Origin: Pocillopora damicornis
Lineage: Eukaryota
Assembly: GCF_003704095.1 (NCBI RefSeq)
Contig: NW_020845673.1
Location: 124,001-188,000 of the forward strand
DNA: 64,000 nucleotides
Direction of reading: 5' to 3'
Part shown: piece by piece, positions 110 through 64,000 of the stretch
Layout of the letters: each line of letters begins with the position of its first letter
How positions within the stretch are numbered: the stretch's first letter is position 1
Translations under genes and position numbers: made by a program
Notes under the pieces: model-generated
Told to the model about the DNA's origin: nothing
Databases searched by the model: none
Seen by the model: only the letters and a program-made list of their open reading frames with translations

Positions 110-414
110 ACCAATGCCGCATGCCTCTTGGTGCAGAAGACGGCCGCTTGGTCCCAGGTTCTTTCTCGGCCTCTACTTACTATAATCATTATCTGGCACC
201 ATGGCACGGTCGCTTAAATCACCGCTGGTCATGGAGCGCACGTTACCGCCGGCACGGCCAATGGATGCAGATTTCTTTTGGAGGAAGTGCAACAGTGAAG
301 GGAATCGCGTCACAAGGCAGACAGGACGCTAACCAATGGGTAACGCAGTACACACTTGGTCGCAGTACAGATGGCATGAAATTTTATCCATACCACGAGG
401 GACGAGGAACAATG
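110..414 (+). CDS. FA58C domain A1, long exon
   Basis: AG/GT, 305 nt; DQCRMPLGAED..YYNHYLAPWHGRLNHRWSWS. Confidence 0.9.
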
Positions 415-13313: not shown

Positions 13314-13351
<38 letters not shown>

Positions 13352-52300: not shown

Positions 52301-55300
52301 GTATGAAACTAGCCTTCCTATATTATCCTATTGAATTATTTAAGTAGGTCTACAATTTATGTTTCCCTCTTAGTTTTCTCTCTTAGCTTTTAGTTGTATA
52401 TAGTTTATAAATAATATTGAAATTGTAAGATAGCATATTTTTATTTAATTTTTTTTCTCGAAGATATTAGCTCTACAGCTACACTGAATTTCGTGCTTAA
52501 ATAAAGTATATGTATGTATGTATGTATGTGTTTGGTTGCTTGTCCTGTTTCAGAAATTTGATAATAACGGTTCTTTTCCTCAAAAAAGGGTACCCAGGGT
52601 CATTGTAATGGAAACAAATATTGCAAATAAACGTAGATTAGTTGGAAATTGCAGCAAGAAAAGGGAAGCCAGATACTTAGCTACTAAAAGAGCACATTCG
52701 AGGAGATGAACTTGGGGTAACCAGAAACGAATCCAATGAAAAGCAGGTCGGAAGACTTGAACTGAGGACCACTCGGTTACTGTGCCTCCTTATGAGATAT
52801 CCCTTTAAAGAATCATTCCTTTGAAATATTCAGATATTCGTGACGTTGTTAAAATTTATTACAGATTGTTACTTCATAGAAATGTTTAACATTTTTCATT
52901 ATTTCAGATCTTCCAGGCCAATATTGAGAGATATTTTGTCGTAACCCATCGCTTCTTTAGGCCATTTGTGGCTCGATTCGTGCGAATCAATGTCAGGAGT
53001 TGGTATGGATACATCTCTATGAGAGTTGAACTTTACGGCTGTAGATTAGGTGAGGAGAAAATGAGGTAATAGTAAATGACTTAATATTGCGTCAGATGTC
53101 AACGACTCAAACTTATTTCAAATTGAGTGGTAATGGTAATCTAGGATTGCTTTGGTTTTACTTCACTATGATTTATGATTGGTCTAGAAAATTCGAGTCA
53201 CGTTTATCAGCCAGGTATGTGCGAAACAGAAACCAATCACGACATGGTCACTTGAGTTTTCACCTCAGAAGCCTGAGTCTGATTTCAGGACCTGGTGTCA
53301 CATACGGGTTGAGTTAGTTGATGACTTTCTTGCTTGCTCCGAAAGTTATTCAACAGTTCCTCCAGTGTTACTTTCTTATAAAACCTAAATTCCAAATTCC
53401 AATTTGATTTAGAACCATGCGACATACCTACCTTGTGCATATCCCCCGCTAAAGGCCATTGAAGTTGTATAACTTCGTTACTTCTTTCTCTCACTCTTTA
53501 CTCAAGGCCGAATGTGTAACCAACCAATGGGCTTACAAAACGGACGCCTCAGAAACCACCTAATGACAGCGTCTTCTCAGTGGGATAAATACCACGCTGC
53601 TTTCCTGGCGAGACTTCATCGCCGGCGGGCTGGGAAGTACATGGGTGCATGGAGTGCCAGGAGTAACAACAGATACCAGTATCTACAAATTGATTTCACA
53701 AGGCCGTCCAAGATCATCAAGATAGCTACTCAAGGAAGGCACGATGCTGATCAATGGGTCACGCAGTATTATATTACGTACAGTGTGAATCTGGTCAATT
53801 TTGTGGAATACAAGGAGAGAAACAATAGGAAGGTTTGAACGTTTGTAATCATTAAGATATTATGCAGCGAGAAGAAATAGCGCCCCAGGGAAATTACGTG
53901 ACCGCATTCGATTGGGAAAACATTGTTCAAATTGAACAAGTAATTGGACATAACGACCATTAGCTCGACGACAATTGGTAAAAGAGGAAAAGAGCACAAA
54001 AGGAGGAAAGAAACTGTAAAGAAGAGAAGAAGGAAAGGAAAAAGAAAGAAAGAAAAAATAGAGGAAAGAAAATAAAAGTAAATGATTTACAACACAAACA
54101 TAAGATTATCCTCTGCTTGCTTAGCGTCCATGCATAACGTGAATTTTTACGATATACTGCCTTACTTTTCAGAGGTTGCTAATTCACATTTTTTCCCTAA
54201 CCCTTCAATAGTACTTCACCGGAAATCGAGACCGTAACAGTGTGGTCCACAACCCACTTAATCCTGCGATTCGATGTCGTTACATCCGGGTTCATCCTTG
54301 GGGATGGTACAGACACATCTCCATGAGAGCTGAGTTCTATGGATGTTTCACAGGTGCAGAAGTGTTCATTATATTTAGGTTTACAGCAAACGAATGAGGT
54401 ATTTTCCAAATTGGTTCGAAAATGGTGAAAAAAAAAGCTTTTAAGCAAGAAACAACATTATCCACATAGGAAGCAGACGTTCTTCTAACTGAGAACATTG
54501 CATTCAGCCCCAAGTTTTTTCTGAATCTTATTTCGGTTTGAGAAATACATGTACTTGTCTAAATAAAGCTTTTGGGACTACCAAGCAACTTCACATTTGT
54601 GGTAATGGAATGAATTCTTTGTGAAATGTGGCATCTAGTTGTTCTGATTGTTAGCCACGGTTGTGGAGTTGCTCTTACTTGTTAATTGAGGTTAATTTTT
54701 CCCTTCTTTTCAGACCGTTGCACCATGCCTCTCGGTATGGAGGATCGCCGTATCTTGTCAGGACATCTTCGTGCTTCATCATCATACAACTACAACCACG
54801 GCCCCGATCGATCACGTCTCAACATCTACGCCAGTCACAGCCGCACAGGGGCCTGGGTAGCCAAGTATAGAAACACCAAGCAATGGCTTCAGATTGACTT
54901 GAGGCAGATGTGTATCATCAAAGGAATCGCCACACAGGGAAGGAGAGAAGCTCATCAGTGGGTGTCCAGTTATGTTGTCTCATACAGCAAAGATGGCCGA
55001 AGGTTTAGAGCTTATGCAGTTGGTGGAAGAGTAAAGGTAAACTTGTACACAACTTTATATTTGTTTGTTCCTTTTTGTCTGAAGTGGTTGGCTTACGACT
55101 ATTCGATAACTTACGGCGGTCTGCCAGGGAATCTTAGAATAACGAACTGTCGGGCGCTGTTCGTTAAAACAGAGGTTTGCTAAAAAAAGGGAGCTCGCTA
55201 TAACGGACGTTCGCTTCAACAGACGTTCGTCATTACGAAGAGTGATCGTGGGGATCGTAATCACGCGCTTCTGCTTGGCTAAGGGAACGTATTTGTTAAA

Positions 55301-58300
55301 CGTTATACGTTATCTGGTATTCGTTATGTATTACTGAAAACGGGTGAAATAGCTCACTGTGTCTATAATAAGAAGACATAACCAATGTCAGACTTACTTA
55401 CCTCGTATGCTTCGTGGTTACTTTCACGCAGAGATTCCGTGGAAACTATGATATTTACCATACTGTTGCCCAGAGAGTATCACCTTTCATTAGAGCCCGG
55501 TATATAAGGATTCATCCCAAGACTTGGAGGTCATATATTGCCATGAGAGTGGAGTTGTATGGGTGCCGATATAAAGGTAAACATTTGAACACTGCAAACA
55601 CGATTGCTTATGTCTCATCTGGCAAATCAGCAAAAGATACTTTTGTTGACATCCTATTTATTGTAAGAAAACAAAAGCGACTTAATGTTGGAGATGATTC
55701 TAAGACTTAAGATGATTTCTGCTGGTGAAGGTATGAGTTGAATTTGAGGGAGAGAAGAAAAGTAATTAATATAACTCTGAGTAGTTAAACTGTAGGGCTG
55801 CGAAAAGCATGAAGCGATTGAGGTTTTTTTCCTGCTCTAAATCAAGGCTAAGGGAATTCGTCATCTTCTTGACATCTACTTTAACCCTTCAAAATAAGGA
55901 GAAAATGTTTATACATCTCTTTGTTTGTTTCTTTTCGGTTTGCCAGAATATGTATGCGACAGACCTCTAGGTATGCAAAGTGGCCGAATCAAAAATGCAG
56001 CCATCACAGCCTCATCTCAGTGGGACAAAAATCATGCTTCTTGGCTTGCCAGACTTGGGAACATGCGCCGTGGCAGACTGATGGGTGCCTGGTCTGCTAA
56101 GAAGAACAACTACAATCAGTGGATTCAAGTTGATCTGCACAGGTCCATGAAGGTCACTGGTTTGGCTACACAAGGCAGATATGAAGCTGCACAATGGGTG
56201 ACAGCGTTTTACGTTCTCTACAGCGCGGACGGAGTGAAGTTTGCTAAGGTTAAGAATTGGTGGGATGTGGTGAAGGTGAGCGTTAGTTTAAACTATCGTG
56301 TTATTTGTGTTTATTTTTGTGTGTTGGAAAAAGCTTTGGAATTGAAACGAATTCCCCATAAAGTATGCAAGGAAACAATGGACCCCTATGTGAGTTTAGG
56401 TGGAAGGTTAGAACCTTTACGCGACCAATTGCGAAAGTCACGGGGCAAACAATCTCTTTTGTGCGTCATCGCTGTTTCCTCTGTGTCCCAGGATTTTGGG
56501 GTACACAATATATGCACTAAAAGATCTAGTCCAGGCAAAACAATTACGGAGGGTTGGTTTCAAAAGCTTCAGGTGATTTTGTGCCGGAAGTGTGGGACAG
56601 AAATGTAGGCGTGTGATTTTTCAGACTCAAGGTAAAGGTTAGGTGGGTGGCTCATTAACACAGGCATAAGACGCGAGCGGCGACCAAAAGTACAGAGCCT
56701 CACGTCTGAAGCGCTTTGATGCCGAATAAAAAATCGGACATGCCTTGTTTTAGCCTTCTAAACTAAACGTCACATACAAAAGGTTACAGAGAAAAGAACT
56801 CCCAACTTTCGGTCATTGTCCATACATCTAACACTGACGTGTGTGCTTTAACTCCCTCTTGGTCATTAGAAAATCCACAGATGAAACTTCTTTTTTTCGT
56901 CTCGAAATCTACGTGAAGGTACCACTCTATGTCGTTGTAAGGAAAGATGCTCTTATTAATTGATTCCGTGAAAATAATTTTTTTTCATAGACTTTCCCTG
57001 CCAATGTGGACAGATATTCCATACGCAACAATCCTCTGCCGTACCCCATCTATGGACGTTTTGTTCGACTGCAAATGCGCGGCTGGCGATCACACATTTC
57101 AATGAGGCTTGAGTTGTACGGTTGTCCATGGAGTAAGTCTGTTTGCCATGTAGTTTTTGGAAAAACTCTAATCTCTTGTAAATGTTAGATGCTACTCTCT
57201 CCTGTAAATGTTTCGAAAAAGGAATGTGATAAGCAATGATTGGATGAGATTGAGCATGTTATCATGAACTATCAAAACCGGGGTCCAAGTTATCTTCCAA
57301 AGCCGAGGGCTGAGGCAGATAACACAGATACGAGGTGTGATAATTCATGATATCATGCGAAAACCGAATTTAATGATTAGTTAGTAAAGTAAGTCTAATG
57401 CATGATAGTATATTTCATGACAACCGTGTGATAGTGTCTTTCTATAGAGAACTTAGTATGCGTTATGTCTAAATTAAGTTTCTAGAAAAAATAACAGAAC
57501 GCTATATATGCAACTGCCATACTTGACCGTCAACCTTCAGTTATTTTCTATACCAATACGGCCTGCCAAAACTATCTTCAATCCGTGGGGTATCTTCCAA
57601 ATTTCCACTGAATTCGCGTTAACTTCAGATTTTTTCATACACAGATTGTTACTTCTTTTGATTTACTGCTAACACTCTGAATTAACTATATGTTAATCCT
57701 TTTTTTCTTCTTCAGACCGTTGTGATGTACCACTCGGCGTTGAAGATGGTCGCTTCCCCGACCAGCTCATCACTGCTTCCTCATTTTACAACTACTACTG
57801 TGCACCAAGAAACGCCAGGCTCCACCAGAGACGAGTCGGAAGATTTGGAGGAGCTTGGTGCGCAAAAAGAAGCGATAGACGACAGTTCCTTCAGTTCGAC
57901 TTTGGAGGACTTACTCGAGTAACCCGTGTTTCTACCCAAGGTCGTCAAAATTCAGATCAATGGGTCACAAGTTACTATATAACTTTTGGCCGAGATGGTC
58001 AACATTATACACCTTATAGAGAAGGACGCCGTACTAAGGTACACTAGTTTGAATCCTGTATAAAAAGGCATTTTGTTTCGGACTTAAAACCGCCTTAGCT
58101 ATACATTAAAGGTACGACAGAATAAGCAGTGTGCCTGAAGCGCGGGAAAACGCCGCTTGCTAAATGTCAGTTAGTTCTAGATTCGCTTCTGATTGGTTAG
58201 GAGGGTGGCGAAAATTTTTTTTAGACTAATCGCAAAGCAGAGTAATGTAAAGCCAATGCAAACCCGGCATACACCTGATACTTGCTCCTAAATCGCTCAT

Positions 58301-61300
58301 GATATGCAAAATAGTAAGTTTACTTATTGGTGAGAAGCCATTTTCCAAAAGCCTTAGTGACGGTGGCAAATTTGTTTCTCCCCCTGTATAGATATTCGCT
58401 GGCAATTATGACCGATACATGGTTGTCACCAATCGATTCCTGAGGCCACTGTCTGGAAGGTACTTTAGGATTCATCCAGTTACTTGGCGAAGCTGGATTT
58501 CAATGAGAGTGGAATTTTATGGCTGTATTATTGGTAGGTATAAAATAATTATAAATATCTTATAACAAAGATGCTCTGAGAGGAATATATTTTCTGCTTG
58601 AGTTTTCTGATACTTTAATTTTCTTATTTAGTTTTTGCGGTTTTTCTAGGCCTACGTTTTGGAGTTTTTTTTTCTCTCCAGTGTGGTTTAGCCTGCAAAA
58701 ATGCAAATTCAATAGGGGAAAGATAAGACGTTTATATCAACAAAGAGATGAATGAATAAAGAAATTGTATTATACATTTAGTGTTTGTTAAAATGAGAAA
58801 AAAGTTAGAAGAAACTCTTCAAGGTCAAGGAATGAGTGAATTTCGTTGGAATCTGGAAAAACTAAATTTCAGTGGAATACTCGTAGGAAAATGTGAGATT
58901 CGAACTTTTTAAAACATCCATTTCTCTCGGTTTCATTACATTGCTTTCTGTCGCGCTCAAAATTTCTTTCCGCGATTCGTGGAAATTTTGGTCTGTTGTA
59001 AGGGGGGTGCGGAGGGGGGGCTGAACGTTACCACAGTATGTTATATTTTGTCTTTATCTGATTAAGGGCGTTTTTATTTATACCAAGGAAAAGTCAGGAA
59101 AAGAGTAAGAAAACATTTGAAAACAGATGTGTGTATTTGTTTCCTTATTATAATGTAGCAGTCTCCTCATGCCTGAAATTTTCCTCGGTTAGGTCCAAGA
59201 TGCGACAAACCACTCGGTATGCAAAATGGCCGCATTCGGCAAACCCAACTATCAGCCTCTTCGAGCTGGGATGTTAATCATGGTCCTCGCAATGCCCGAC
59301 TAAACTTCCGCCGAACAGGTTCCCGTATGGGAGCCTGGTGTGCCAGGCACAACACCCGCTACCAGTGGCTTGCGGTAGACTTTTATCGAGCCATGCGCGT
59401 GGCGAAGATATCTACGCAAGGTAGACAGGATGCCGCACAGTGGGTCACGCAATACTTTGTAGAGTACAGCCAAGATGGTTCCACGTTCACTGACTACAAG
59501 GAAAATAGCAACCGAAAGGTAATAAACAGATCAGGTTTTATGAAATGTTGTAGGTATCCGTGTGTCTCGGATTAGCTCTGTTGCAGGTGCTGCAAATTGG
59601 AAATGAAGTCTGTGCCTTGTTTTATAGCTGCTAACTAACCCAACCAATCCTCCCATCCAAGAATAAAAAGACTCTCGAGGAAATGAGTCGCCTCATCAAT
59701 TGAGACAAGTTCACCCCGGCCTTTCCCCGTTCGCCCCCAAGTCTTCAACTCGACTCCTTTCGTCAGAGCGATACATAAGTGTGTCGGATTCTTCAGGGAC
59801 AGGTTCTGCCTTAAGGAAACGAGTCAAAAGATTCGGGGAGACCTTGTCGAGATGGAGGCGAACTAGTGTGGTCGAATTTGATACTGTGATATCTTTGATG
59901 AGAATTTTAAAGTTAATGGATTTCTTTTGATTAAACATGCATTGATTTTAGTCAGCCCTTTCCTTATAATTGCAAAATTCTTAACATAAATGCAAAGTTT
60001 TGACTGGTATTGTTACTTTCACAGTACTTTACAGGAAACAGGGATCAAAACAGTGTTGTGCAATATAGTCTGTTTCCACCAATCAAAGCTCGGTTTGTGC
60101 GCATTCGTCCGTGGGGCTGGTACAGACATATTTCTATGAGAGTGGAGTTCTTTGGATGCCCAGAAGGTACATTTGCTTAGACAAGAGAGCTCTGAAAATA
60201 ACTGTCGTAGTCCAAATATCTCTAAGTGATGAGCGCTTTTTACCCAAACGTGCTAAAAGATCAGTTAAATAGTGGCCTATTCAGAAGATTGATTTATCGT
60301 GAATTTTTTGCTCTGACAGAGGGCTGACGCTTAAACAACAACTTTTTAAAGTCCGGTACTTCTGTTTATCTACATGGGACGAATACGTAAATTCTACGCG
60401 ATTAGTACCTTGTTACTTCACTGGCCACCAACATGACACAACTTTTCTCAATTCTTAGAAGACAAGGTTATTATTCGTTTATAATTTTGCTCCAATATTT
60501 ATTAATTTAAAAAATCAGACTTCCATATAGATTAGTTTCTTTAAAGTTCTTTCTTGCAATATAATTTTTTTCTACTTTATTCGACAACTTGGACTGGTAA
60601 CGTTATTGAATTTGAGCCTTCAAAAAAAAAATCTGCTTGCCAGAAGGTTTCTCATTTGGATCATATTTTCCTTCCCCTGAATCCTAGACCCGTGTGGTGT
60701 TCCTCTTGGTTTGGAAGACAAGAGAATCCCAAATGGCCAGTTTTCTGCTTCATCATATTACAACCATCACCTTGCACCGTGGCATGGAAAACTTAATCAC
60801 CGCTGGTCATGGAGTGTTCGATATCGTAACAACAAACAGTGGCTTCAGGTTAATATGGTGGAAATCTACCGTGTGAGAGGCATTGGATCCCAAGGCCGAC
60901 AGGATGCAAACCAATGGGTGAAGACTTACACTGTGTCGTATGGAATGAATGGAGTGGATTTCACTCAGTATAAGGAGAATAGAAGAGTGAAGGTAACCGA
61001 TGACCAATTTTTTTACTTTATATTGGCTTTAAGGGAATGAGAGAGAGTAACTCTGATAGTAGGCCTCTTTCAAATACTCGTGATGATATACTTTTAGAAA
61101 TTTTATCAGTGAACAAATAATTGGCTCTTTTCACTTTATAACTATTTTCCACAAAAAATTGACAATGATGACTCCCGATACGCGTCGATTTTTTTTTTAT
61201 CAAATCAAAACCCACTTAACTACGCTTACAGAGATCTCCAGGAATATTTGAAAGGGTTAAGAGGTCTATGGTCATGTTAGTTTTCGAGATGGTTGCAATG

Positions 61301-64000
61301 AGGTTTCGACGTGGTCTCCGTAACTTTTTTTTTCATAGCTTTATAAGGATTCCAAACGAATCAGCTGATTGCACTCTATGTAACAGTCACATGAGTAATC
61401 GCTTGATACAATTTGACTGTACTCGTTATAATGAGGCCGTGAACAACTTTTTCACGTAATAACATGTGTTTTTGGATTGTTAAAGTTATTCACAGCCAAC
61501 ACAGACCGCCACTCATTGGTGTATCATCGATTCAGAAAGAGACTCCCAGCTGTGTATGTCAGGGTTTACCCTAAGACCTGGTACAGTTGGATATCAATGA
61601 GAATCGAATTGTATGGATGTTCAGGTATTTGAGAAGTTATGGCAGAGTAGAAAACAAATAGAAATCAAGTTTTGAAGCTTTCATCAATAAAAAATTGCTG
61701 TGCACAGCAGTCAGATACACTTTTATCAGTTTTCTTTTTCTTTTTTTTTTCCTTTGTTTATTTGTTTTGCAATTGCACGTATAAGAAAACCCGTTTACCG
61801 TGAGCCTATCGCTAAGCTATGAACCCCTCCCTCCTTACGGGGACTTACTAGATTTCAGGCTTGCCAGGAGTGGGGGTGCATGCACTTTTAGATAGGGAGG
61901 GGGTGTAAAAAAGGGGCGAATTTTCAATTCTTTAAATTTTCTTCGTTATTGTTTGTTGTTGTTTTTTCCAAAATGTTTATATTTTCGCAAATTTTTATTT
62001 TGATACAGCTGCTGTTTGTAACAAAGCCTTGGGTATGAAGAGTGGTGCTATCAGGAATAAGCAAATCACAGCTTCTTCAGAGTGGGACAAATACCACAAT
62101 GCCAGACTGTCTAGGCTGGGGACAGTCAAACGGGGTCGGTACAGGGGGGCCTGGAGCGCACGCCACAACAATCACCATCAGTGGCTTAAAGTGGACTTTA
62201 GACGACCGATGAAAATCAAGAAAATAGTCACAAAAGGTCGACAGGATACCAACCAATGGGTAACAAGATACCAAGTGACGTACAGTCAAGATGGAACACA
62301 CTGGACCATGTACAGATACAAGAGTAACGATGTGGTACGTATTATCAGCGGCACTTATTGAAAGAAAATATCGTATTACAAGGTTTACTCTGTCAACTAA
62401 ATCAATACAGGACTATTTTGTCGTTTCATCGCCTGAGTTAAAAGTTAAATAAGAAATTTGCTATTTGGGATTATTGTGAATCGTAATCATGGAAACAGAA
62501 AAAATTGGAAAGGAATTAGGACGAAAGTACTGAGTCTACCGAGGAAAAATTTTCCCAAATGCGTCTGTTTTAAGCACTGTTAAAAATGGGAAATCATTTT
62601 TAACCCACGTCTTCATTTCTCATGACACTTCCTTCAGTATTCTTCCTACGTTTTAAGGAAAAGCGCGGAAGGCATTGCGAAGGCTTTTCTTATAAATAAT
62701 CCGATTCATGAAGCGTTTGGAACTTTTAAACAAAACAAGCTTAAAAGTAACCCTTGACATTTCATGTGATATTTATAATGCATGTGCCATTTAAACTGTT
62801 ATTTATTGGTTGCATCTTACAGTACTTCCAAGGAAACCGAGACCAACACAGTCTCGTATGTAATGTACTTAACCCACCAGTGATCGCTCGTTTTATGCGC
62901 ATCATTCCACGAGGATGGTATCGGCACATCAGTATGAGGATAGAGTTCTATGGATGCAAAGCAGGTAAAAGAGAGAAGAAAAAGATGGTATCGAAGCTGT
63001 TGCGCATAGGTTATATGACATTAGGTCGTGTTGTATTGGGATCAATGGCTTAACGTTGGGTTGGCCTATTGAATTCACACCTCTTTTATTTGGAAAAAAA
63101 CCGTTCTAAGTTTAACCGGTTGATCAAAGTTTTCAAACGAGATTAAATAGGGTTCAAACGGTTGAAAATCTGAGAGTCTGATCACTCTTTCACAATTTAT
63201 TCCCATTATCAAAATTTTCTTAATTTTCTATTTTCCTATTAATCACTTGTTATGCTTTCATTTTTCGCCTCACCTATAACTGTAGACAAGTGCGAAGCGC
63301 CGCTCGGAATCCAAGATGGCCGCATAACGCAATCTATGATGTCTGCGTCCACGTTCTACAACCGATATTATGGTCCATGGTCTGCCAGACTGCAGGCTCG
63401 GAATCACGGTGCAACCCGTGGCGGCTGGATAGCTAGGATTAACAACAATCGACAATGGCTGCAGATCGACCTCGGAGCCAAATCTGTCGTTAAGAAGATT
63501 GCCACTCAAGGCAGATACGATGCTAATCAATGGGTTACTAGTTACACGCTTTCGATCAGTAACAATGCTGTCAGGTTTTATCCTTACAAGGAAAATAGGC
63601 GCACTAGGGTAAGTACACCACCTTTTTGTTTGTTTGTTTGTTTGTTAGTTTGGAGAACTACGTCGAATTAGTCAAAGACGATAATTGCAATCCTTACATT
63701 GACTTAACGTTTCCTTTGCCTCCGGCTCGTGATTTACCAACTTTTTTCGTGGGCTAATACGCTACTATTAACCCACGCTAGTAAACCAATGAAAAGTGTG
63801 CTCTGTTACTTTTTCTAAAATTTACCACAATTTTTAGTGGGTTTACCGGTGCAATTAACGAAACGTTTTTGGCGTTAATCGTACAAACAGGTGCTCTTGG
63901 TATTTCAGTCTTTACATAAAATTGGATAAGTACTGTTTATTAGACTTAAAATATTAATTTTTTACTGTCTCTCCTATCCTGTCCATATCAAAACAGATCT
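110..64000 (+). CDS. Giant multi-exon tandem F5/8 type C (discoidin/FA58C) protein, internal part only: at least 43 domains, about 6,600 aa, octamer super-repeat (A-H)n
   Basis: 86 exons bounded by AG/GT with consistent phases (long exons 3n+2, short exons 3n+1); FA58C motifs CxxPLG..TASS..ARL..GAW..QWLQVD..ATQGR..QWVTxY / FxGNxD..RxxPxxW..ISMRVExYGC; next short exon begins at 63997. Confidence 0.93.
784..966. mobile_element. MITE-like repeat family 2 (TTAA-flanked)
   Basis: TTAATCCTTTAACTCCC..CAATACCAAATTCTC..GAGATCTTGAGAGTTAAAG; related copies at about 2628-2831, 25040-25207, 47256-47440. Confidence 0.6.
1064..1205 (+). CDS. FA58C domain A1, short exon
   Basis: 142 nt; MFRGNMNR..EVYGCST. 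Confidence 0.9.
1714..2018 (+). CDS. FA58C domain B1, long exon
   Basis: 305 nt; GLCNGVLGLQNG..QAWCARY. Confidence 0.9.
2290..2431 (+). CDS. FA58C domain B1, short exon
   Basis: 142 nt; YFPGSRD..ICMRVEFYGCPA. Confidence 0.9.
2628..2831. mobile_element. MITE-like repeat family 2
   Basis: Shares AAGCA(G/A)ACAA..TTAGT..CAATACC core with 784-966; ends AAAAGGTTAA. Confidence 0.6.
2966..3288 (+). CDS. FA58C domain C1, long exon
   Basis: 323 nt; DRCFVPLGMQDG..ARLQARNYGSTRGGW. Confidence 0.9.
3405..3652. mobile_element. MITE-like repeat family 1 (TTAACCCTTT..AAAGGGTTAA type) with internal AT-rich expansion
   Basis: TTAACCCTTTACGCCCTAACATT..CATATTCTCC..GAGCTTCT..TAAGGAGAA..TAGTCACTCTTAGGGG. Confidence 0.65.
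3846..3987 (+). CDS. FA58C domain C1, short exon
   Basis: 142 nt; MFSGNSDR..ELYGCRH. Confidence 0.9.
4209..4390 (+). CDS. FA58C domain D1, long exon 5' part (split by an extra intron)
   Basis: 182 nt; GPLCNRPMG..YQFLQ|gt. Confidence 0.88.
4929..5072 (+). CDS. FA58C domain D1, long exon 3' part
   Basis: 144 nt; VDFSRAA..HTRK; 182+144=326 as in other D exons. Confidence 0.88.
5460..5601 (+). CDS. FA58C domain D1, short exon
   Basis: 142 nt; YFPGNRDQN..EFYGCLT. Confidence 0.9.
6241..6563 (+). CDS. FA58C domain E1, long exon
   Basis: 323 nt; DHCKMPLGVED..NYNHGPDR. Confidence 0.9.
7192..7339 (+). CDS. FA58C domain E1, short exon
   Basis: 148 nt; VFSGNFDR..EVFGCYYGG. Confidence 0.9.
7775..8103 (+). 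CDS. FA58C domain F1, long exon
   Basis: 329 nt; ARFCTNPVG..KHWWNYVK. Confidence 0.9.
8520..8723. mobile_element. MITE-like repeat family 1
   Basis: CCTAACATCAGTATGCATATTCTCCATAC..AGTCACTCT..AAAGAGTTAA. Confidence 0.7.
8886..9027 (+). CDS. FA58C domain F1, short exon
   Basis: 142 nt; QFPGNYDR..ELYGCPW. Confidence 0.9.
9590..9912 (+). CDS. FA58C domain G1, long exon
   Basis: 323 nt; SHCDMPLGLEDG..RRRYSRFGGGW. Confidence 0.9.
10091..10232 (+). CDS. FA58C domain G1, short exon
   Basis: 142 nt; IFRGNNDR..EFYGCVY. Confidence 0.9.
10749..11074 (+). CDS. FA58C domain H1, long exon
   Basis: 326 nt; GKRCNQPLG..RRVGHRVGAWCARHN. Confidence 0.9.
11448..11658. mobile_element. MITE-like repeat family 1
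   Basis: Same core; ends AAAGGGTTAA. Confidence 0.7.
11717..11858 (+). CDS. FA58C domain H1, short exon
   Basis: 142 nt; YLTGNRDQN..ELYGCST. Confidence 0.9.
11995..12105. repeat. Short palindromic element
   Basis: TACCCCTCCCCTAACCC..GGGGTAGGGAAGGGGTA inverted arms. Confidence 0.55.
12428..12732 (+). CDS. FA58C domain A2, long exon
   Basis: 305 nt; GRCSLPLGLED. Confidence 0.9.
12953..13091 (+). CDS. FA58C domain A2, short exon
   Basis: 139 nt; VFTGNSNR..EIYGCY. Confidence 0.9.
13170..13340. repeat. Compound tetranucleotide microsatellite (GATT/GACT/GACA)n
   Basis: Directly visible. Confidence 0.95.
13755..14071 (+). CDS. FA58C domain B2, long exon
   Basis: 317 nt; VFSCSSPLVRKLP. Confidence 0.87.
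14548..14689 (+). CDS. FA58C domain B2, short exon
   Basis: 142 nt; YFQGNRDRN..EFYGCRA. Confidence 0.9.
14985..15307 (+). CDS. FA58C domain C2, long exon
   Basis: 323 nt; DPCDVPLGMEDG. Confidence 0.9.
15408..15549 (+). CDS. FA58C domain C2, short exon
   Basis: 142 nt; VFQGNIER..ELYGCRL. Confidence 0.9.
15635..15817. mobile_element. TA-flanked MITE with about 30-bp terminal inverted repeats (Tc1/mariner-type geometry)
   Basis: TA|TGTCAGAAATGCATGCAATAACGAAAATG..CATTTTCGTTACAGCATGCATTTCTGGACG|TA. Confidence 0.7.
16092..16417 (+). CDS. FA58C domain D2, long exon
   Basis: 326 nt; GPLCNRPMGLQSG. Confidence 0.9.
16703..16844 (+). CDS. FA58C domain D2, short exon
   Basis: 142 nt; YFSGNHDRN..EFYGCRI. 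Confidence 0.9.
17296..17618 (+). CDS. FA58C domain E2, long exon
   Basis: 323 nt; DRFTMPLG (N-terminal Cys replaced by Phe). Confidence 0.9.
18214..18358 (+). CDS. FA58C domain E2, short exon
   Basis: 145 nt; MFRGNYD..ELYGGRLR. Confidence 0.9.
18450..18781 (+). CDS. FA58C domain F2, long exon
   Basis: 332 nt; ENFCDAPVG..YWWSYAPR. Confidence 0.9.
19364..19505 (+). CDS. FA58C domain F2, short exon
   Basis: 142 nt; TFQGNRDQ..ELYGSPW. Confidence 0.9.
19615..19813. mobile_element. MITE-like repeat family 1
   Basis: TTAACCCT..AAAGGGTTAA terminal inverted repeats with shared core. Confidence 0.7.
20095..20417 (+). CDS. FA58C domain G2, long exon
   Basis: 323 nt; RCDMPLGIED. Confidence 0.9.
20817..20958 (+). 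CDS. FA58C domain G2, short exon
   Basis: 142 nt; IFLGNYDQ..ELYGCVV. Confidence 0.9.
21364..21689 (+). CDS. FA58C domain H2, long exon
   Basis: 326 nt; GARCNRPLG. Confidence 0.9.
21932..22029 (-). pseudogene. Degenerate intron-containing tRNA-Met (elongator-type) pseudogene
   Basis: Reverse complement GCCTTGTTAGCACAATAGGCAGCAGCGCATCAGTCTCAAG-[insert]-AATTTAAAGGTCGTGGGTACGATCCTCAAATGGGGCA follows the eukaryotic tRNA-Met(CAU) layout as recalled (GCCTCGTTAGCGCAGTAGG..CAGTCTCATAATCTGAAGGTCGTGAGTTCGATCCTCACACGGGGCA); anticodon and T-loop mutated. Confidence 0.7.
22138..22279 (+). CDS. FA58C domain H2, short exon
   Basis: 142 nt; YFQGNRDQN..EFYGCAE. Confidence 0.9.
22728..23032 (+). CDS. FA58C domain A3, long exon
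   Basis: 305 nt; DRFVMPLG (N-terminal Cys replaced by Phe). Confidence 0.9.
23564..23702 (+). CDS. FA58C domain A3, short exon
   Basis: 139 nt; VFSGNTNR..EVYGAS. Confidence 0.9.
23810..23940. repeat. Imperfect palindrome
   Basis: ATCGTAGAA..GATTTATCGTACAC / GTGAACGATAAATC..TTCTACGAT. Confidence 0.6.
24002..24327 (+). CDS. FA58C domain B3, long exon
   Basis: 326 nt; ASPCNKPLG. Confidence 0.9.
24802..24943 (+). CDS. FA58C domain B3, short exon
   Basis: 142 nt; LFQANRDQN..EYYGCVA. Confidence 0.9.
25357..25679 (+). CDS. FA58C domain C3, long exon
   Basis: 323 nt; DRCDVPLGVRDG. Confidence 0.9.
26303..26444 (+). CDS. FA58C domain C3, short exon
   Basis: 142 nt; IFQGNTER..ELYGCRL. Confidence 0.9.
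27179..27504 (+). CDS. FA58C domain D3, long exon
   Basis: 326 nt; GVLCNRPMG. Confidence 0.9.
28181..28322 (+). CDS. FA58C domain D3, short exon
   Basis: 142 nt; YFTGNRDQN..EFYGCFT. Confidence 0.9.
28422..28744 (+). CDS. FA58C domain E3, long exon
   Basis: 323 nt; DRCVMPLG. Confidence 0.9.
28774..28985. mobile_element. MITE-like repeat family 1
   Basis: ATCAGTATGCATATTCT..TTATTCTCGTGACCTTAATGTTTGATTCAG core. Confidence 0.65.
29136..29280 (+). CDS. FA58C domain E3, short exon
   Basis: 145 nt; VFRGNYD..ELYGCRLR. Confidence 0.9.
29546..29874 (+). CDS. FA58C domain F3, long exon
   Basis: 329 nt; ERFCDSPLG. Confidence 0.9.
30270..30411 (+). CDS. FA58C domain F3, short exon
   Basis: 142 nt; TFQGNRDR..ELYGAPW. 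Confidence 0.9.
30741..31063 (+). CDS. FA58C domain G3, long exon
   Basis: 323 nt; RCDMPLGVEDG. Confidence 0.9.
31492..31633 (+). CDS. FA58C domain G3, short exon
   Basis: 142 nt; IFQGNYDR..EFYGCVV. Confidence 0.9.
31732..32057 (+). CDS. FA58C domain H3, long exon
   Basis: 326 nt; GPKCDKPLG. Confidence 0.9.
32263..32535. repeat. Two-copy direct repeat, about 138-bp period
   Basis: TGTTGA(A/G)GTCAAATCCTGCGATTATCAT..ATTGGCTAAGAGCT..AGCAGTTATCTA at 32263 and 32401. Confidence 0.85.
32670..33794 (-). CDS. Intronless rhodopsin-family (class A) GPCR, peptide-receptor-like, nested in host intron (paralogue 1, 374 aa from first ATG)
   Basis: Seven hydrophobic segments; TM1 GN, TM2 NMAVSDL, TM3 CK..IAIDRF, TM4 STW, TM5 VPLF..Y, TM7 INPVIC, C-tail LCCCF; ORF track starts at a TTG (33839), first ATG at 33794. 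Confidence 0.9.
   Translation of the reverse strand: MQGLNETTHDHQQMNCSYQELSASEDNFKLITYCFLLLGSLFGNIFIIIIVYKNQDLHKTVNYFIVNMAVSDLVFPLVWLPVEIVAKANNSTWWRWYLSGTFGSITCKFIIFVSQVSFLVSSQSFVWIAIDRFFAVVFPVRLGFISKKIRMIAIASTWSLAAAFCFTYLLSLDLRKEGNHACCKHTTFVSINQKYFTIYLWFQTTLLYFVPLFISTLLYAAITSALHKQSKSLANSGPRIQRNIFEKRKRAIRLSVVTMVTYFLSVSPAMLVRLHFSRVLPLSCTMIEVLRVTADVCHYASTVINPVICLSFVQSYRRGLRNILCCCFRKQRDETAQQGQITQKEIITPSGANYRNRRNCKVSANNEETLDTTL
34745..34843 (-). pseudogene. Remnant of a third GPCR paralogue (C-terminal tail only)
   Basis: Translates as LCSCCSKRSNEKAKLERIT-(frameshift)-GMKNFSRDNDR, aligning with LCYCFRTRRDETGKREQKTPTEMKSSSTANCR of paralogue 2. Confidence 0.55.
35420..36553 (-). CDS. Intronless rhodopsin-family (class A) GPCR, nested in host intron (paralogue 2, 377 aa from first ATG)
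   Basis: Same motifs (GN, NMAVSDL, IAIDRF, STW, INPVIC); clear paralogue of 32670-33794; first ATG at 36553. Confidence 0.9.
   Translation of the reverse strand: MPLQGLNETEHDHQQTNCSYQELPAAVDNFKLCMYCFLLLGSLFGNIFIIIIVYKHRDLQKTVNYFIVNMAVSDLVFPLALLPLEIVSMATGSTLTRWYVDGIFGSITCKSIHFVAQVSPAVSSQSFVWIAIDRFVAILFPVRLGLVSRKIRVIAIASTWILAAAINSNHLVSQDLHIRDNKTFCEVKLVSAITEETYFAISYYMQLFLNTFGSFFLSAVLYTAIAVSLHKQSKALANSGPNIQRNVFKKRKRAIQLSAVTMVTYYLTVTIPMLSYLQHRKVFRFPCNVMKVVSFMGDLCQYASTVINPVICLSFVHSYRQGLRNILCYCFRTRRDETGKREQKTPTEMKSSSTANCRNRRNCKVSANNDEILDTAL
38201..38342 (+). CDS. FA58C domain H3, short exon (after 6,143-nt intron)
   Basis: 142 nt; YFTGNRDQN..EFYGCTE. Confidence 0.9.
38575..38755 (-). mobile_element. 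Possible remnant of a Penelope-like retroelement terminus
   Basis: Reverse strand ..CTTCCGCTCTGATTGTCGAAACGTCAGTCAC..ACAACAGTCCTA resembles termini I recall from this class; no ORF. Confidence 0.35.
38810..39114 (+). CDS. FA58C domain A4, long exon
   Basis: 305 nt; DRCAMPLG. Confidence 0.9.
39124..39338. mobile_element. MITE-like repeat family 1 (diverged)
   Basis: TTAACCCTGTACACTCTAACATTAGTATG..; further decayed copies at about 4015-4145, 22296-22442, 31105-31275, 34915-35103. Confidence 0.55.
39527..39665 (+). CDS. FA58C domain A4, short exon
   Basis: 139 nt; IFTANTDR..EFYGCS. Confidence 0.9.
40256..40581 (+). CDS. FA58C domain B4, long exon
   Basis: 326 nt; ASLCNRALG..GAWCPKH. Confidence 0.9.
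40880..41021 (+). CDS. FA58C domain B4, short exon
   Basis: 142 nt; LFQANRDQN..PCLRAEFYGCPV. Confidence 0.9.
41379..41701 (+). CDS. FA58C domain C4, long exon
   Basis: 323 nt; DRCDVPLGIQDG. Confidence 0.9.
41930..42071 (+). CDS. FA58C domain C4, short exon
   Basis: 142 nt; LFQANTER..ELYGCRL. Confidence 0.9.
42524..42849 (+). CDS. FA58C domain D4, long exon
   Basis: 326 nt; GHLCNRPMG. Confidence 0.9.
43238..43471. repeat. 28-bp minisatellite, about 8 copies
   Basis: Consensus CGAACGAACGGAAGCTCGGTAATACTTC, head to tail, no spacers. Confidence 0.9.
43522..43663 (+). CDS. FA58C domain D4, short exon
   Basis: 142 nt; YFTGNRDQN..EFYGCLT. Confidence 0.9.
43762..44084 (+). CDS. FA58C domain E4, long exon
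   Basis: 323 nt; DKCTMPLG. Confidence 0.9.
44615..44759 (+). CDS. FA58C domain E4, short exon
   Basis: 145 nt; LFRGNYD..ELYGCRYK. Confidence 0.9.
45151..45479 (+). CDS. FA58C domain F4, long exon
   Basis: 329 nt; ERFCDRIQG. Confidence 0.9.
45963..46104 (+). CDS. FA58C domain F4, short exon
   Basis: 142 nt; TFRGNYDR..EVYGGAW. Confidence 0.9.
46607..46929 (+). CDS. FA58C domain G4, long exon
   Basis: 323 nt; SKCDVPLG; exon starts with GTAAGT. Confidence 0.87.
47594..47735 (+). CDS. FA58C domain G4, short exon
   Basis: 142 nt; IFPGNFDR..ELYGCVI. Confidence 0.9.
48400..48725 (+). CDS. FA58C domain H4, long exon
   Basis: 326 nt; GPRCDKPLG. Confidence 0.9.
49111..49252 (+). CDS. FA58C domain H4, short exon
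   Basis: 142 nt; YFTGNRDQN..EFYGCVE. Confidence 0.9.
49566..49870 (+). CDS. FA58C domain A5, long exon
   Basis: 305 nt; DRCNIPLG. Confidence 0.9.
50180..50467. mobile_element. MITE-like dispersed repeat (family 3)
   Basis: Ends TTTTCAATAGGGTGTCGAAA..TTTACGACACTCAATCGAAA form imperfect inverted repeats; related pieces near 5095-5165, 53115-53260, 58130-58300. Confidence 0.55.
50534..50672 (+). CDS. FA58C domain A5, short exon
   Basis: 139 nt; VFSGNSDR..ELFGCT. Confidence 0.9.
50928..51253 (+). CDS. FA58C domain B5, long exon
   Basis: 326 nt; SALCSTPLG. Confidence 0.9.
51713..51854 (+). CDS. FA58C domain B5, short exon
   Basis: 142 nt; TFRGNNDQN..EIYGCKA. Confidence 0.9.
51978..52300 (+). 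CDS. FA58C domain C5, long exon
   Basis: 323 nt; DPCDVPLG. Confidence 0.9.
52908..53049 (+). CDS. FA58C domain C5, short exon
   Basis: 142 nt; IFQANIER..ELYGCRL. Confidence 0.9.
53507..53832 (+). CDS. FA58C domain D5, long exon
   Basis: 326 nt; GRMCNQPMG. Confidence 0.9.
54212..54353 (+). CDS. FA58C domain D5, short exon
   Basis: 142 nt; YFTGNRDRN..EFYGCFT. Confidence 0.9.
54714..55036 (+). CDS. FA58C domain E5, long exon
   Basis: 323 nt; DRCTMPLG. Confidence 0.9.
55432..55576 (+). CDS. FA58C domain E5, short exon
   Basis: 145 nt; RFRGNYD..ELYGCRYK. Confidence 0.9.
55947..56275 (+). CDS. FA58C domain F5, long exon
   Basis: 329 nt; EYVCDRPLG. Confidence 0.9.
56991..57132 (+). CDS. FA58C domain F5, short exon
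   Basis: 142 nt; TFPANVDR..ELYGCPW. Confidence 0.9.
57716..58038 (+). CDS. FA58C domain G5, long exon (correct frame missed by the ORF track)
   Basis: 323 nt; RCDVPLGVEDG..YYCAPRNARLHQRRVGRFGGAWCAK. Confidence 0.9.
58392..58533 (+). CDS. FA58C domain G5, short exon
   Basis: 142 nt; IFAGNYDR..EFYGCII. Confidence 0.9.
59193..59518 (+). CDS. FA58C domain H5, long exon
   Basis: 326 nt; GPRCDKPLG. Confidence 0.9.
60025..60166 (+). CDS. FA58C domain H5, short exon
   Basis: 142 nt; YFTGNRDQN..EFFGCPE. Confidence 0.9.
60688..60992 (+). CDS. FA58C domain A6, long exon
   Basis: 305 nt; DPCGVPLG. Confidence 0.9.
61486..61624 (+). CDS. FA58C domain A6, short exon
   Basis: 139 nt; LFTANTDR..ELYGCS. 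Confidence 0.9.
62009..62334 (+). CDS. FA58C domain B6, long exon
   Basis: 326 nt; AAVCNKALG. Confidence 0.9.
62823..62964 (+). CDS. FA58C domain B6, short exon
   Basis: 142 nt; YFQGNRDQH..EFYGCKA. Confidence 0.9.
63286..63608 (+). CDS. FA58C domain C6, long exon
   Basis: 323 nt; DKCEAPLG. Confidence 0.9.

What the first reader, a model, noticed from the sequence alone, without database searches (positions are those of the whole stretch)
110..64000. Giant poly-discoidin protein: at least 43 F5/8 type C domains in one frame, open at both ends
Seen: 86 GT-AG exons join with consistent phase into about 6,600 aa (19,799 nt by my exon sums) of FA58C domains only. There is no signal peptide, TM segment, other domain or stop, so the full protein is larger. 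Known: well-characterised FA58C proteins carry few copies (factor V/VIII, MFG-E8, EDIL3, neuropilin: 2; sea-urchin nectin: 6). Inference: a titin-scale secreted multivalent lectin-like or adhesive polymer that I cannot assign to a named gene, and that automated annotation would probably split into many lactadherin-like fragments.
Basis: partly seen in the sequence, partly recalled or inferred. Interest (0 to 1): 0.92.

Follow-up and report, generated by a model that had tools for sequence, protein, structure and literature searches.

The report
Giant 75-discoidin-domain coral matrix protein gene
The whole window is the middle of one real, spliced, expressed stony-coral gene that strings about 75 discoidin (F5/8 type C) domains into a strongly positively charged protein of roughly 12,500 residues. 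Each domain has been kept one-for-one across distant coral lineages, yet databases hold only unnamed fragments of the gene.

Summary
My own model gives 86 GT-AG exons, 19,799 nt and 6,599 codons with no stop. That is 42 full discoidin domains plus one half, all on the + strand.

- **Transcription.** Poly-A RNA contigs confirm seven predicted introns to the base and join neighbouring domains.
- **Extent.** The window is Pocillopora damicornis contig C2308:124001-188000. The gene runs from about 118-120 kb to 239.8 kb of that contig.
- **Architecture.** An unassigned N-terminal beta-sandwich-like domain is followed by 63 discoidin units. Next come a VWD (GDPH motif) plus EGF module and 12 cysteine-poor discoidin units. 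A proline-rich linker and a C-terminal VWA domain close the protein.
- **Repeat order.** Units alternate between two types and form an 8-unit super-repeat, repeated seven times.
- **Conservation.** Porites and Acropora fragments match the units one-to-one and in order, at 67-91% identity. Same-class paralogues average about 67%.
- **Composition.** The product has pI about 10.8 and only 2 N-glycosylation sequons, against about 72 expected.
- **Annotation.** RefSeq holds a 13-unit fragment, LOC113674139.

Most likely this is a secreted, multivalent, polyanion- or glycan-binding matrix or mucus scaffold. The function is untested, the signal peptide is unresolved, and three units are cut by assembly gaps.

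The parts
110..11858 (+). Super-repeat 1, units u1-u8 (classes A-H). Exons: 110-414, 1064-1205 | 1714-2018, 2290-2431 | 2966-3288, 3846-3987 | 4209-4390, 4929-5072, 5460-5601 | 6241-6563, 7192-7339 | 7775-8103, 8886-9027 | 9590-9912, 10091-10232 | 10749-11074, 11717-11858
   Evidence: Exon model: all GT-AG, with phase 1 between units and phase 0 inside. PF00754 matches on 112-414, 1064-1204, 1716-2018, 2290-2430, 4929-5072 and 5460-5600. Porites P0183 is collinear with u0-u15.
12428..22279 (+). Super-repeat 2, units u9-u16. Exons: 12428-12732, 12953-13091 | 13755-14071, 14548-14689 | 14985-15307, 15408-15549 | 16092-16417, 16703-16844 | 17296-17618, 18214-18358 | 18450-18781, 19364-19505 | 20095-20417, 20817-20958 | 21364-21689, 22138-22279
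   Evidence: RNA contigs show GT..AG joints at 12732|12953, 13091|13755, 14071|14548, 15307|15408, 15549|16092, 16417|16703 and 16844|17296. One 810-nt poly-A contig spans four exons, covering units 9 and 10.
22728..38342 (+). Super-repeat 3, units u17-u24. Exons: 22728-23032, 23564-23702 | 24002-24327, 24802-24943 | 25357-25679, 26303-26444 | 27179-27504, 28181-28322 | 28422-28744, 29136-29280 | 29546-29874, 30270-30411 | 30741-31063, 31492-31633 | 31732-32057, 38201-38342
   Evidence: Model. PF00754 matches on 31734-32057 and 38201-38341. Unit 24 is split by the 6,143-nt intron 32058-38200. Porites P0174 is collinear from u21 onward.
38810..49252 (+). Super-repeat 4, units u25-u32. Exons: 38810-39114, 39527-39665 | 40256-40581, 40880-41021 | 41379-41701, 41930-42071 | 42524-42849, 43522-43663 | 43762-44084, 44615-44759 | 45151-45479, 45963-46104 | 46607-46929, 47594-47735 | 48400-48725, 49111-49252
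   Evidence: Model. An RNA contig laid on a paralogous place carries the letters of junction 43663|43762 (table 5c). RefSeq fragment P0187 starts inside the first exon of u32.
49566..60166 (+). Super-repeat 5, units u33-u40. Exons: 49566-49870, 50534-50672 | 50928-51253, 51713-51854 | 51978-52300, 52908-53049 | 53507-53832, 54212-54353 | 54714-55036, 55432-55576 | 55947-56275, 56991-57132 | 57716-58038, 58392-58533 | 59193-59518, 60025-60166
   Evidence: Model. P0187 (RefSeq LOC113674139) maps at 97-100% identity to these exons. Pfam finds 13 full-length PF00754 domains in it.
60688..64000 (+). Start of super-repeat 6, units u41-u43. Exons: 60688-60992, 61486-61624 | 62009-62334, 62823-62964 | 63286-63608, 63997-64000 (the last exon runs on to contig position 188138, 138 nt beyond the window)
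   Evidence: Model, with the extension. PF00754 matches 63288-63608.
32058..38200 (+). Long phase-0 intron inside unit 24. It carries two antisense intronless GPCR ORFs, which are not part of the gene product.
   Evidence: Intron bounds. ORFs 32670-33839 (-) and 35420-36598 (-) match PF00001 7tm_1 at E 7.5e-33 and 2.7e-28.

Best explanation
The window is the central third of one very large + strand protein-coding gene of a stony coral, by all signs Pocillopora damicornis.

**Layout along contig C2308 (contig = window + 124,000)**
1. A possible signal-peptide exon at 117,945-117,988. This is unresolved.
2. A domain of about 175 aa, unassigned and beta-sandwich-like, in two exons at about 120,353-120,711 and 122,066-122,216.
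3. 63 discoidin units, u0-u62, from 122,328 to 214,615.
4. A module of about 677 aa holding a VWD domain with a GDPH motif and a tenascin-type EGF (214,880-221,289).
5. 12 more discoidin units, u63-u74, which lack the flanking cysteines and are even more basic (221,4xx-237,924).
6. A proline-rich exon (238,071-238,169).
7. A C-terminal VWA domain with the stop codon (238,785-239,843).

The gene has roughly 170 exons, about 38 kb of coding sequence and about 12,500 residues.

**Inferred origin of the array.** A two-domain pair, like the C1-C2 pair of lactadherin or factor V/VIII, grew to an 8-unit block. That block was copied seven times before the two main stony-coral lineages split. Since then each unit has been held in place.

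**Inferred mechanism.** The protein enters the secretory pathway and stays free of N-glycans. It forms a nearly linker-free chain of about 75 beta-barrels, with 4-7 residues between the last Cys of one unit and the first Cys of the next. This chain displays many cationic ligand-binding faces. VWD, by disulfide multimerisation and possibly GDPH self-cleavage, and VWA, by matrix or collagen binding, would tie it into a network. The result would be a multivalent scaffold that binds anionic partners in coral extracellular matrix or mucus. Candidate partners are sulphated glycans, acidic matrix proteins, acidic lipids and microbial surfaces.

**Shown:** gene structure in the window, splicing and transcription in a 6-kb sample, domain identities, periodicity, purifying selection, unit-level orthology, charge and sequon depletion.

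**Inferred:** a single transcript over all 122 kb, secretion, multimerisation, ligand class and tissue.
For: **Gene model**
- 86 in-phase GT-AG exons with no stop.
- 72 complete units across 116 kb. Each is a multiple of 3 nt, GT-AG and stop-free.
- No FA58C exon lies on the - strand, upstream of 122,333 or downstream of 237,920 within 64-268 kb.

**RNA**
- Seven predicted introns are confirmed to the base in poly-A and random-primed coral RNA contigs.
- Contigs span units 9-10, 11-12 and 12-13.

**Domains**
- PF00754 exon by exon.
- 13 full-length PF00754 matches in P0187, which is identical to spliced units u32-u44.
- VWA PF00092.
- VWD PF00094 at 30.8 bits, and EGF_2 at 23.7 bits.
- Motif CHGTGDPHYRTFD.
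- The C-terminal exons read in frame to a single stop.

**Periodicity and selection**
- Mean identity is 67.5% at lag 8, 48% at even lags and 40% at odd lags.
- Classes A-H repeat seven times.
- pN/pS is 0.27 with synonymous sites saturated.

**Orthology**
- Porites P0174 matches u21..u49 and P0183 matches the N-terminal domain plus u0..u15.
- Acropora P0192 matches u59, u60, u62 and u64..u70, with the VWD module in between.
- All are in order. In nearly every case the positional match beats the best paralogue.
- Acropora has a FA58C+VWA model directly downstream.

**Secretion and charge**
- pI 10.55, net charge +702 in the window product.
- 1 sequon against 42 expected by global shuffle, or 18.6 by column shuffle with a minimum of 8 in 2,000.
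- 2 sequons against 71.6 expected over 72 units, pI 10.83.
- The orthologues share both traits.
Against: - RNA support covers only 6 of 116 kb. Contigs cannot show transcript starts or ends.
- A single transcript across the whole array, especially across the 6.8-kb VWD interval and the assembly gaps, is not shown.
- Three units (u55, u63, u71) are cut by N gaps, so an intact frame there cannot be verified.
- No signal peptide is demonstrated. The conserved ATG exon at contig 117,945 ends in phase 2, but the next recognised exon needs phase 1.
- The stop after the VWA has a strong alternative donor (CAG|GTGAGG) a few codons before it.
- No structure was predicted and no ligand is known.
- No tissue or proteomic evidence was found in the literature.
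- All units are phase-1 symmetric, so cassette skipping would keep the frame. This cannot be excluded.
Confidence: 0.8

Rival explanations
1. The locus is two or more adjacent genes rather than one. For example, one gene could end before or inside the VWD interval (contig 214.6-221.4 kb) and a second could carry the Cys-poor units plus the VWA. Alternatively there may be internal promoters that give shorter products.
For: - The two parts differ in cysteine content (2.45 against 0.5 Cys per unit) and in charge.
- A 6.8-kb interval and an N gap lie between them.
- Annotators in three species cut the locus into several models.
- RNA linkage was tested only for units 9-13.
Against: - The Acropora model P0192 runs through u59, u60 and u62, the VWD-EGF module and u64-u70 in one frame.
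- Every unit starts with a phase-1 acceptor and ends with a phase-1 donor. None has its own ATG or signal exon.
- All fragment models start at internal Met residues inside a domain.
- Inter-unit introns are only 91-780 nt long.
Confidence: 0.12
2. The array is a bank of alternative cassettes. Because each unit is phase-1 symmetric, transcripts may include only subsets of units, as in Dscam-like or titin-like differential splicing. Mature proteins would then be much smaller and variable.
For: - All units are exact multiples of 3 nt with identical flanking phases.
- The RefSeq relatives of other FA58C genes list many isoforms, for example X5 and X11.
Against: - Every junction seen in RNA joins immediate neighbours. 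The one apparent long skip (14683 to 17304) turned out to be the paralogous neighbour junction 43663|43762.
- Unit-by-unit orthology with strong purifying selection on every unit argues that each is used.
Confidence: 0.06
3. The array is an assembly artefact, or a decaying pseudogene array with no functional product.
For: - The assembly has N gaps in the downstream part.
- The genome paper states that repeats were under-assembled (PMC6208414).
Against: - No stop occurs in 33.4 kb of coding sequence.
- pN/pS is 0.27.
- Spliced poly-A RNA is present.
- Other sequencing runs hold 95-96% of the sampled words.
- Unit order is identical in independently assembled Porites and Acropora genomes.
Confidence: 0.02

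Closest known systems
Sea-urchin nectin (Paracentrotus lividus, 984 aa, six FA58C domains; P0005)
   Same: It is an extracellular-matrix adhesion protein made almost wholly of tandem FA58C domains. It ranks among the best hits to the profile of this gene's domains (628 bits, 6 stretches). It also lacks N-glycosylation sequons, with 0 against 8.6 expected.
   Different: It has 6 domains, not about 75. Its pI is 5.98 against 10.8. It has no VWD, VWA or N-terminal domain and no super-repeat. It is not an orthologue: the best local identities are about 55-59% over single exons.
Nematostella vectensis LOC5512761 (XP_048581428.1, 3,055 aa; P0155) and its coral and anemone orthologues (P0175-P0177, P0186)
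   Same: These are predicted secreted cnidarian proteins with a long uninterrupted FA58C array (15 domains) ending in a VWA domain. They are basic (pI 9.46).
   Different: They begin with a signal peptide, a Cys-rich head, two TSP1 repeats and a VWA. They have no VWD. Their arrays hold 11-15 units. They are at most about 55% identical to this gene's units. Pocillopora has its own separate copy (pdam_00013777, P0186), so this is a paralogous gene. They are uncharacterised as well.
Lactadherin / MFG-E8, EDIL3 and coagulation factors V and VIII (C1-C2 pair)
   Same: They share the FA58C fold family, PF00754. They carry a pair of two distinct FA58C types in tandem, which is echoed by the odd/even alternation in this array. 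They have basic membrane- or ligand-binding domains. Automated names for coral fragments are of this kind.
   Different: They have two domains only, attached to EGF or A domains. Their function is phosphatidylserine binding, which is not shown here.
VWD-containing gel-forming polymers (von Willebrand factor, mucins, FCGBP, VWDE)
   Same: A VWD domain with the GDPH motif and the GLCGN..NG..DD motif is present, together with an EGF-like Cys-rich stretch and a VWA. From general knowledge, VWD domains drive disulfide multimerisation, and GDPH sites self-cleave in MUC2, MUC5AC and FCGBP.
   Different: There is a single VWD. No C8, TIL or CTCK domains were seen. There is no Pro/Thr/Ser-rich O-glycosylated region; the bulk is folded lectin-type domains. 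Cleavage and multimerisation are untested.
Titin and other giant proteins with super-repeats
   Same: Size is above 10,000 residues with more than 150 exons. One small beta-domain type is arranged in a higher-order super-repeat whose individual positions are conserved between distant species.
   Different: The fold is unrelated (Ig/Fn3 against discoidin). Titin is intracellular and sarcomeric, while this protein is presumably extracellular. This is an analogy of design only.
Oculina patagonica LOC144659348 (4,077 aa; P0172)
   Same: It is a coral protein predicted to consist of 26 FA58C domains.
   Different: Its repeats are nearly identical to each other. All best-match the same unit here at about 54% identity. 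Its pI is 8.14. It is a different and recently amplified gene.

Membership tests
F5/8 type C (discoidin) domain, Pfam PF00754 | Sequence match to the family profile above the curated cut-off, over the full profile length | tested here: met
   N-terminal half exons score 42.7-68 bits against a cut-off of 28.2. C-terminal half exons align to profile positions 86-127. The database protein P0187 is identical to spliced units u32-u44 and has 13 matches covering 1-127/127.
F5/8 type C (discoidin) domain, Pfam PF00754 | Cysteine near each end of the domain (the disulfide that ties the N- and C-termini in factor V/VIII C domains, from general knowledge) | tested here: inconclusive
   The patterns 'C..PLG' at the start and 'YGC' at the end are present in most of u0-u62, at a mean of 2.45 Cys per unit. 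They are absent in u13 and u17 and in almost all of u63-u74, at 0.5 Cys per unit.
F5/8 type C (discoidin) domain, Pfam PF00754 | Eight-stranded beta-barrel fold with ligand-binding loops at one end | not tested
   No structure was predicted.
Nectin-type multi-FA58C extracellular matrix protein | Secreted protein with a signal peptide, consisting of tandem FA58C domains only | tested here: not met
   The tandem FA58C body is present. The full gene also carries an N-terminal domain, a VWD-EGF module and a VWA. The signal peptide is not established.
Orthologue of Nematostella LOC5512761 (TSP1-VWA-FA58C array-VWA) | N-terminal TSP1 repeats and closest mutual similarity | tested here: not met
   No TSP1 match lies within 64-268 kb of the contig. 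Unit identity is at most about 55%. A separate Pocillopora protein with TSP1 and FA58C exists (P0186).
Gel-forming mucin / von Willebrand factor type polymer | VWD domain with a GDPH motif | tested here: met
   PF00094 scores 30.8 bits (cut-off 22.9) on L014:533-733 and 34.9 bits in Acropora P0192. The motif CHGTGDPHYRTFD lies near contig position 217,080.
Gel-forming mucin / von Willebrand factor type polymer | VWD-C8-TIL assemblies, a C-terminal cystine knot, and long Pro/Thr/Ser O-glycosylated regions | tested here: not met
   Pfam scans of the module's ORFs and of P0192 list no C8, TIL or CTCK. The only low-complexity part is a 33-codon Pro/Arg-rich exon.
von Willebrand factor type A domain, Pfam PF00092 | Profile match above the cut-off covering the domain | tested here: met
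   Two exons match profile positions 1-60 (42.7 bits) and 53-168 (49.8 bits), against a cut-off of 23.8. They read in frame with the last FA58C unit to a stop.

The most novel reading that the evidence does not exclude
The protein could be an extracellular 'molecular ruler' or template. It would be a stiff chain of about 75 discoidin barrels, some 0.3 micrometres long on my rough estimate of about 4 nm per domain. Its 8-unit super-repeat would be about 30-35 nm, roughly half a collagen D-period. Each unit would have its own fixed partner or register, which would explain why every position has stayed distinct and orthologous since the two main stony-coral lineages split. With VWD-mediated polymerisation and VWA or discoidin binding to collagen, it would organise a periodic matrix specific to stony corals, possibly at the tissue-skeleton interface. 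I found one-to-one orthologues only in stony corals. Other cnidarian groups were not searched systematically.
Probability: 0.12. Interest if true: 0.92.

Novelty: new variant of a known kind. Interest (0 to 1): 0.74.

Why it matters
- **Size and domain count.** If it is one product, this is among the largest proteins predicted in any cnidarian. It is by far the largest discoidin-domain array I could find. In a profile search of 1.84 billion representative proteins, and in three word-seeded searches, no other gene exceeded 26 domains. The only 29-domain hit is a fragment of this same gene in Porites.
- **Conservation.** Each of about 70 repeat units has stayed individually recognisable and in order between Pocillopora and Porites or Acropora. 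Such position-specific constraint on a tandem repeat protein is rare and points to a precise structural role.
- **Chemistry.** Extreme positive charge, near-total absence of N-glycosylation sites and VWD/VWA polymer modules define a testable candidate for a major structural component of coral matrix or mucus. Current annotations hide this gene as scattered 'uncharacterized' or 'lactadherin-like' fragments.
- **Downstream analyses.** That fragmentation also distorts gene-family counts, orthology tables, and proteomic and single-cell analyses in corals.

Tried and rejected
- **Pfam, PDB-sequence and ESM-Atlas look-ups of the N-terminal domain exon.** There was no Pfam or PDB hit. The Atlas gave only an unnamed cnidarian cluster (0.97) and a weak lead to bacterial DUF4980 (0.83). 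The domain stays unassigned.
- **Search for a signal-peptide first exon within 100-120 kb by ATG, hydrophobicity and donor.** There was no convincing candidate. Comparison with Porites found a conserved 44-nt ATG exon (MLLRGPLPGLLLFI..., followed by GTAAGT). Its phase (2) does not fit the conserved phase-1 acceptor of the next exon, so this is unresolved.
- **P0001 (Pocillopora verrucosa isoform X5), the top profile hit.** It is a different EGF-FA58C gene with at most 59% identity. The look-up of encoding contigs had no record of it.
- **Search for annotated giant orthologues of 4-13 thousand aa, using an algal 7,401-aa protein as the length carrier.** It found other large FA58C proteins but missed the known 4,476-aa Porites fragment, so it is too insensitive to exclude a full-length model elsewhere. 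The search with P0174 (range 2.5-7.8 thousand aa) found no further orthologue.
- **Literature.** No paper describes this protein. A search for the phrase 'F5 8 type C' returned nothing, probably because of the slash in the printed name.
- Joins were made only inside local scripts for counting. P0187, P0174, P0183 and P0192 served as by-reference stand-ins. For the same reason no structure or complex was predicted.
- **Assembly gaps.** N gaps were not filled.

Full report
**Observation**

The window is about 40% G+C and contains no N. I seeded tblastn with the first two domains. This found 44 N-terminal-half pieces and 42 C-terminal-half pieces, all on the + strand.

Every piece has a phase-compatible AG acceptor and GT donor at the expected place. 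Taking the best-scoring sites gives 86 exons, all GT-AG. They sum to 19,799 nt and 6,599 codons with no stop.

- Each domain is two exons of about 305-332 and 139-148 nt.
- A phase-0 intron lies inside each domain and phase-1 introns lie between domains.
- Unit 4 has one extra phase-0 intron.
- Introns have a median of 457 nt and a range of 91-782 nt, except one of 6,143 nt (32058-38200).
- Pfam PF00754 matches the exons by reference.

**Transcription**

Several coral and marine metatranscriptome runs hold about 22% of the 31-mers of window 12001-18000. That is close to the exonic share of that stretch.

Contigs from two poly-A and two random-primed runs were laid on the stretch. They show GT..AG joints at 12732|12953, 13091|13755, 14071|14548, 15307|15408, 15549|16092, 16417|16703 and 16844|17296. 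All seven are my predicted introns to the base.

- One 810-nt poly-A contig spans four exons, covering units 9 and 10.
- Other contigs join units 11-12 and 12-13.
- The only junction in that stretch not seen (14689|14985) falls at a contig break.
- An odd 'skip' from 14683 to 17304 carries 14 foreign letters. These are exactly the letters of the paralogous junction 43663|43762, so it is incidental support for that junction and not exon skipping.

Contigs cannot show transcript ends, strand or expression level.

**Place and extent**

The window is G000:C2308:124001-188000, on a contig of 316,455 bp in a 234.35-Mb assembly.

- The size matches the published Pocillopora damicornis assembly of 234 Mb (PMC6208414).
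- A RefSeq protein of P. damicornis sits on a contig of exactly 316,455 bp and maps at 97-100% identity to window exons.

I fetched 64-268 kb of the contig. FA58C exons occur only on the + strand and only from 122,333 to 237,920.

With the same rules I modelled 75 units, u0-u74. Of these, 72 are complete. Each complete unit is a multiple of 3 nt, GT-AG and stop-free, and together they make 33,411 nt in 151 exons. Units u55, u63 and u71 are cut by N gaps, which I did not fill.

**Other parts of the gene**

*Upstream.* Two phase-1 exons (about 120,353-120,711 and 122,066-122,216) encode a domain of about 175 aa.
- It has no Pfam or PDB-sequence match.
- The Atlas gives only an unnamed cnidarian cluster and a weak lead to DUF4980.
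- The Porites model P0183 reads straight from this domain into u0. This confirms the join I inferred from the phases.

*Between u62 and u63.* A module of about 677 aa is conserved with Acropora P0192 at 54-77% identity in seven blocks.
- It holds a VWD domain. PF00094 scores 30.8 bits on the Pocillopora exon and 34.9 bits in P0192.
- Motifs CHGTGDPHYRTFD and GLCGNNNGNPHDD are present.
- It also holds a tenascin/teneurin-type EGF (PF07974, 23.7 bits).

*After u74.* A 33-codon Pro/Arg-rich exon is followed by a VWA domain in two exons (PF00092). All read in frame to one stop. A strong alternative donor lies just before that stop.

*In Acropora digitifera.* Three consecutive + strand models occupy the syntenic place: a 1,365-aa FA58C model, P0192, and a 331-aa FA58C+VWA model.

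*First exon.* A 44-nt ATG exon is conserved between Pocillopora (contig 117,945-117,988) and Porites. It encodes a signal-peptide-like start and ends at GTAAGT. Its phase does not fit the next known exon. The 5' end is therefore unresolved.

**Internal order**

Mean pairwise identity between units is as follows.

| Lag between units | Mean identity |
|---|---|
| Odd lags | 40% |
| Lags 2, 4, 6 | 48% |
| Lag 8 | 67.5% |
| Lag 16 | 64% |
| Lag 24 | 61.5% |

So two domain types alternate, and an 8-unit block (classes A-H) repeats.

- The block runs seven times, over u1-u56.
- u0 is H-like and u57-u62 are more divergent.
- u63-u74 form a separate class that is Cys-poor (0.5 Cys per unit) and more basic.
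- Between same-class units, synonymous sites are saturated (pS 0.77), while pN is 0.21. The pN/pS ratio is 0.27, with a range of 0.17-0.41.
- Only 4-7 residues lie between the last Cys of one unit and the first Cys of the next.

**Orthology**

| Fragment model | Species | Units matched, in order | Identity to positional unit |
|---|---|---|---|
| P0174 (29 domains) | Porites evermanni | u21 to u49 | 71-91% |
| P0183 | Porites evermanni | N-terminal domain, then u0-u15 | 67-82% |
| P0192 | Acropora digitifera | u59, u60, u62, VWD module, u64-u70 | 67-81% |

- In nearly every case the positional match beats the best paralogue.
- The orthologues share the high pI (10.6-10.95) and the lack of sequons.
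- The array, with its unit number and order, therefore predates the split of the two main stony-coral lineages. From memory that split is some hundreds of millions of years old. The array has not been homogenised since.

**Composition**

| Measure | Window product | 72 complete units |
|---|---|---|
| pI | 10.55 | 10.83 |
| Net charge | +702 (+10 to +23 per unit) | not computed |
| N-x-S/T sequons observed | 1 | 2 |
| Sequons expected by global shuffle | 42 | 71.6 (minimum 53) |

- The window product is 11.7% Arg. Over the 72 units, Tyr is 6.5%, Trp 3.7% and Glu only 1.7%.
- A within-column shuffle of the window product expects 18.6 sequons, with a minimum of 8 in 2,000 shuffles.
- Control motifs are not depleted in the same way.
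- I read the depletion as selection against N-glycosylation in a protein that passes through the ER. This is indirect support for secretion.
- Sea-urchin nectin and two coral EGF-FA58C proteins show the same depletion.

**Comparison with what is known**

A profile of 31 half-domains was searched against 1.84 billion representative proteins. It gave 11,552 hits.

- The richest in domains were an amphioxus protein (19), Nematostella LOC5512761 (15) and LOC5504709 (14), a P. verrucosa EGF-FA58C protein (12) and nectin (6).
- Word-seeded searches added a crinoid protein (20), an Oculina protein (26 near-identical repeats) and the Porites and Acropora fragments of this gene.
- None has a name beyond 'uncharacterized' or 'unnamed'.
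- RefSeq LOC113674139 (P0187) covers u32-u44 only. It starts at an internal Met and ends by reading into an intron.
- I could not exclude that a full-length model above 7,800 aa exists in some newer annotation. The one search reaching that range was too insensitive.
- No paper on such a protein was found.

**Reading**

This is a single giant gene for an extracellular, cationic, multivalent discoidin chain with polymer-type modules (VWD, VWA). Secretion, multimerisation, GDPH cleavage, ligand class and tissue are inferences.

Rivals are two or more genes, cassette use, and artefact or pseudogene. Each is weighed separately in the report. The last is contradicted by the RNA evidence, the selection signal and the cross-species collinearity.

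**Method note**

Joined sequences were used only inside local scripts for counts and identities. No fold or complex prediction was made on them.

Noticed in passing
window 32670-33839 (-) and 35420-36598 (-): Two intronless rhodopsin-family GPCR ORFs of 389 and 392 aa lie antisense inside the 6.1-kb intron that splits unit 24. They match PF00001 at E 7.5e-33 and 2.7e-28.
   Followed up: partly
window 778-975: A short interspersed repeat lies in the first intron. At least 47 copies at 73-85% identity are scattered over many contigs of the genome.
   Followed up: no
window 1376-1600: A G-rich run (GGGGAGGGGAGGGGGG...) is followed about 150 nt later by its C-rich complement (CCATCCCCTCCCCTCC). 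This inverted pair sits in the intron after unit 1 and may be a transposon remnant.
   Followed up: no
contig C2308:117945-117988 (6 kb upstream of the window); L020:14345-14388: A 44-nt ATG exon encodes MLLRGPLPGLLLFI(..) and is followed by GTAAGT. It is conserved with Porites (MIVRGLLPSVLLLL..), together with about 40 nt of upstream sequence. It is a likely first exon, but its phase does not fit the next recognised exon.
   Followed up: partly
contig C2308:96,400-103,000; L020:1-12023: The upstream neighbour is an RRM-domain gene. It is syntenic with Porites but in inverted orientation relative to the giant gene.
   Followed up: no
P0172 (Oculina patagonica LOC144659348): A different coral gene is predicted to encode 26 FA58C domains, 22 of them nearly identical to each other. 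This suggests a very recent tandem amplification or an assembly effect.
   Followed up: no
P0005, P0001, P0002: Sea-urchin nectin and two coral EGF-FA58C proteins also almost lack N-x-S/T sequons: 0 against 8.6 expected, 1 against 17.8, and 0 against 18.8. Sequon avoidance may therefore be a general trait of this discoidin subfamily.
   Followed up: partly
PMC6208414, section 8: The genome paper lists 'lactadherin'-like genes among coral-diversified families. Fragment models of giant poly-discoidin genes such as this one could inflate that count.
   Followed up: no
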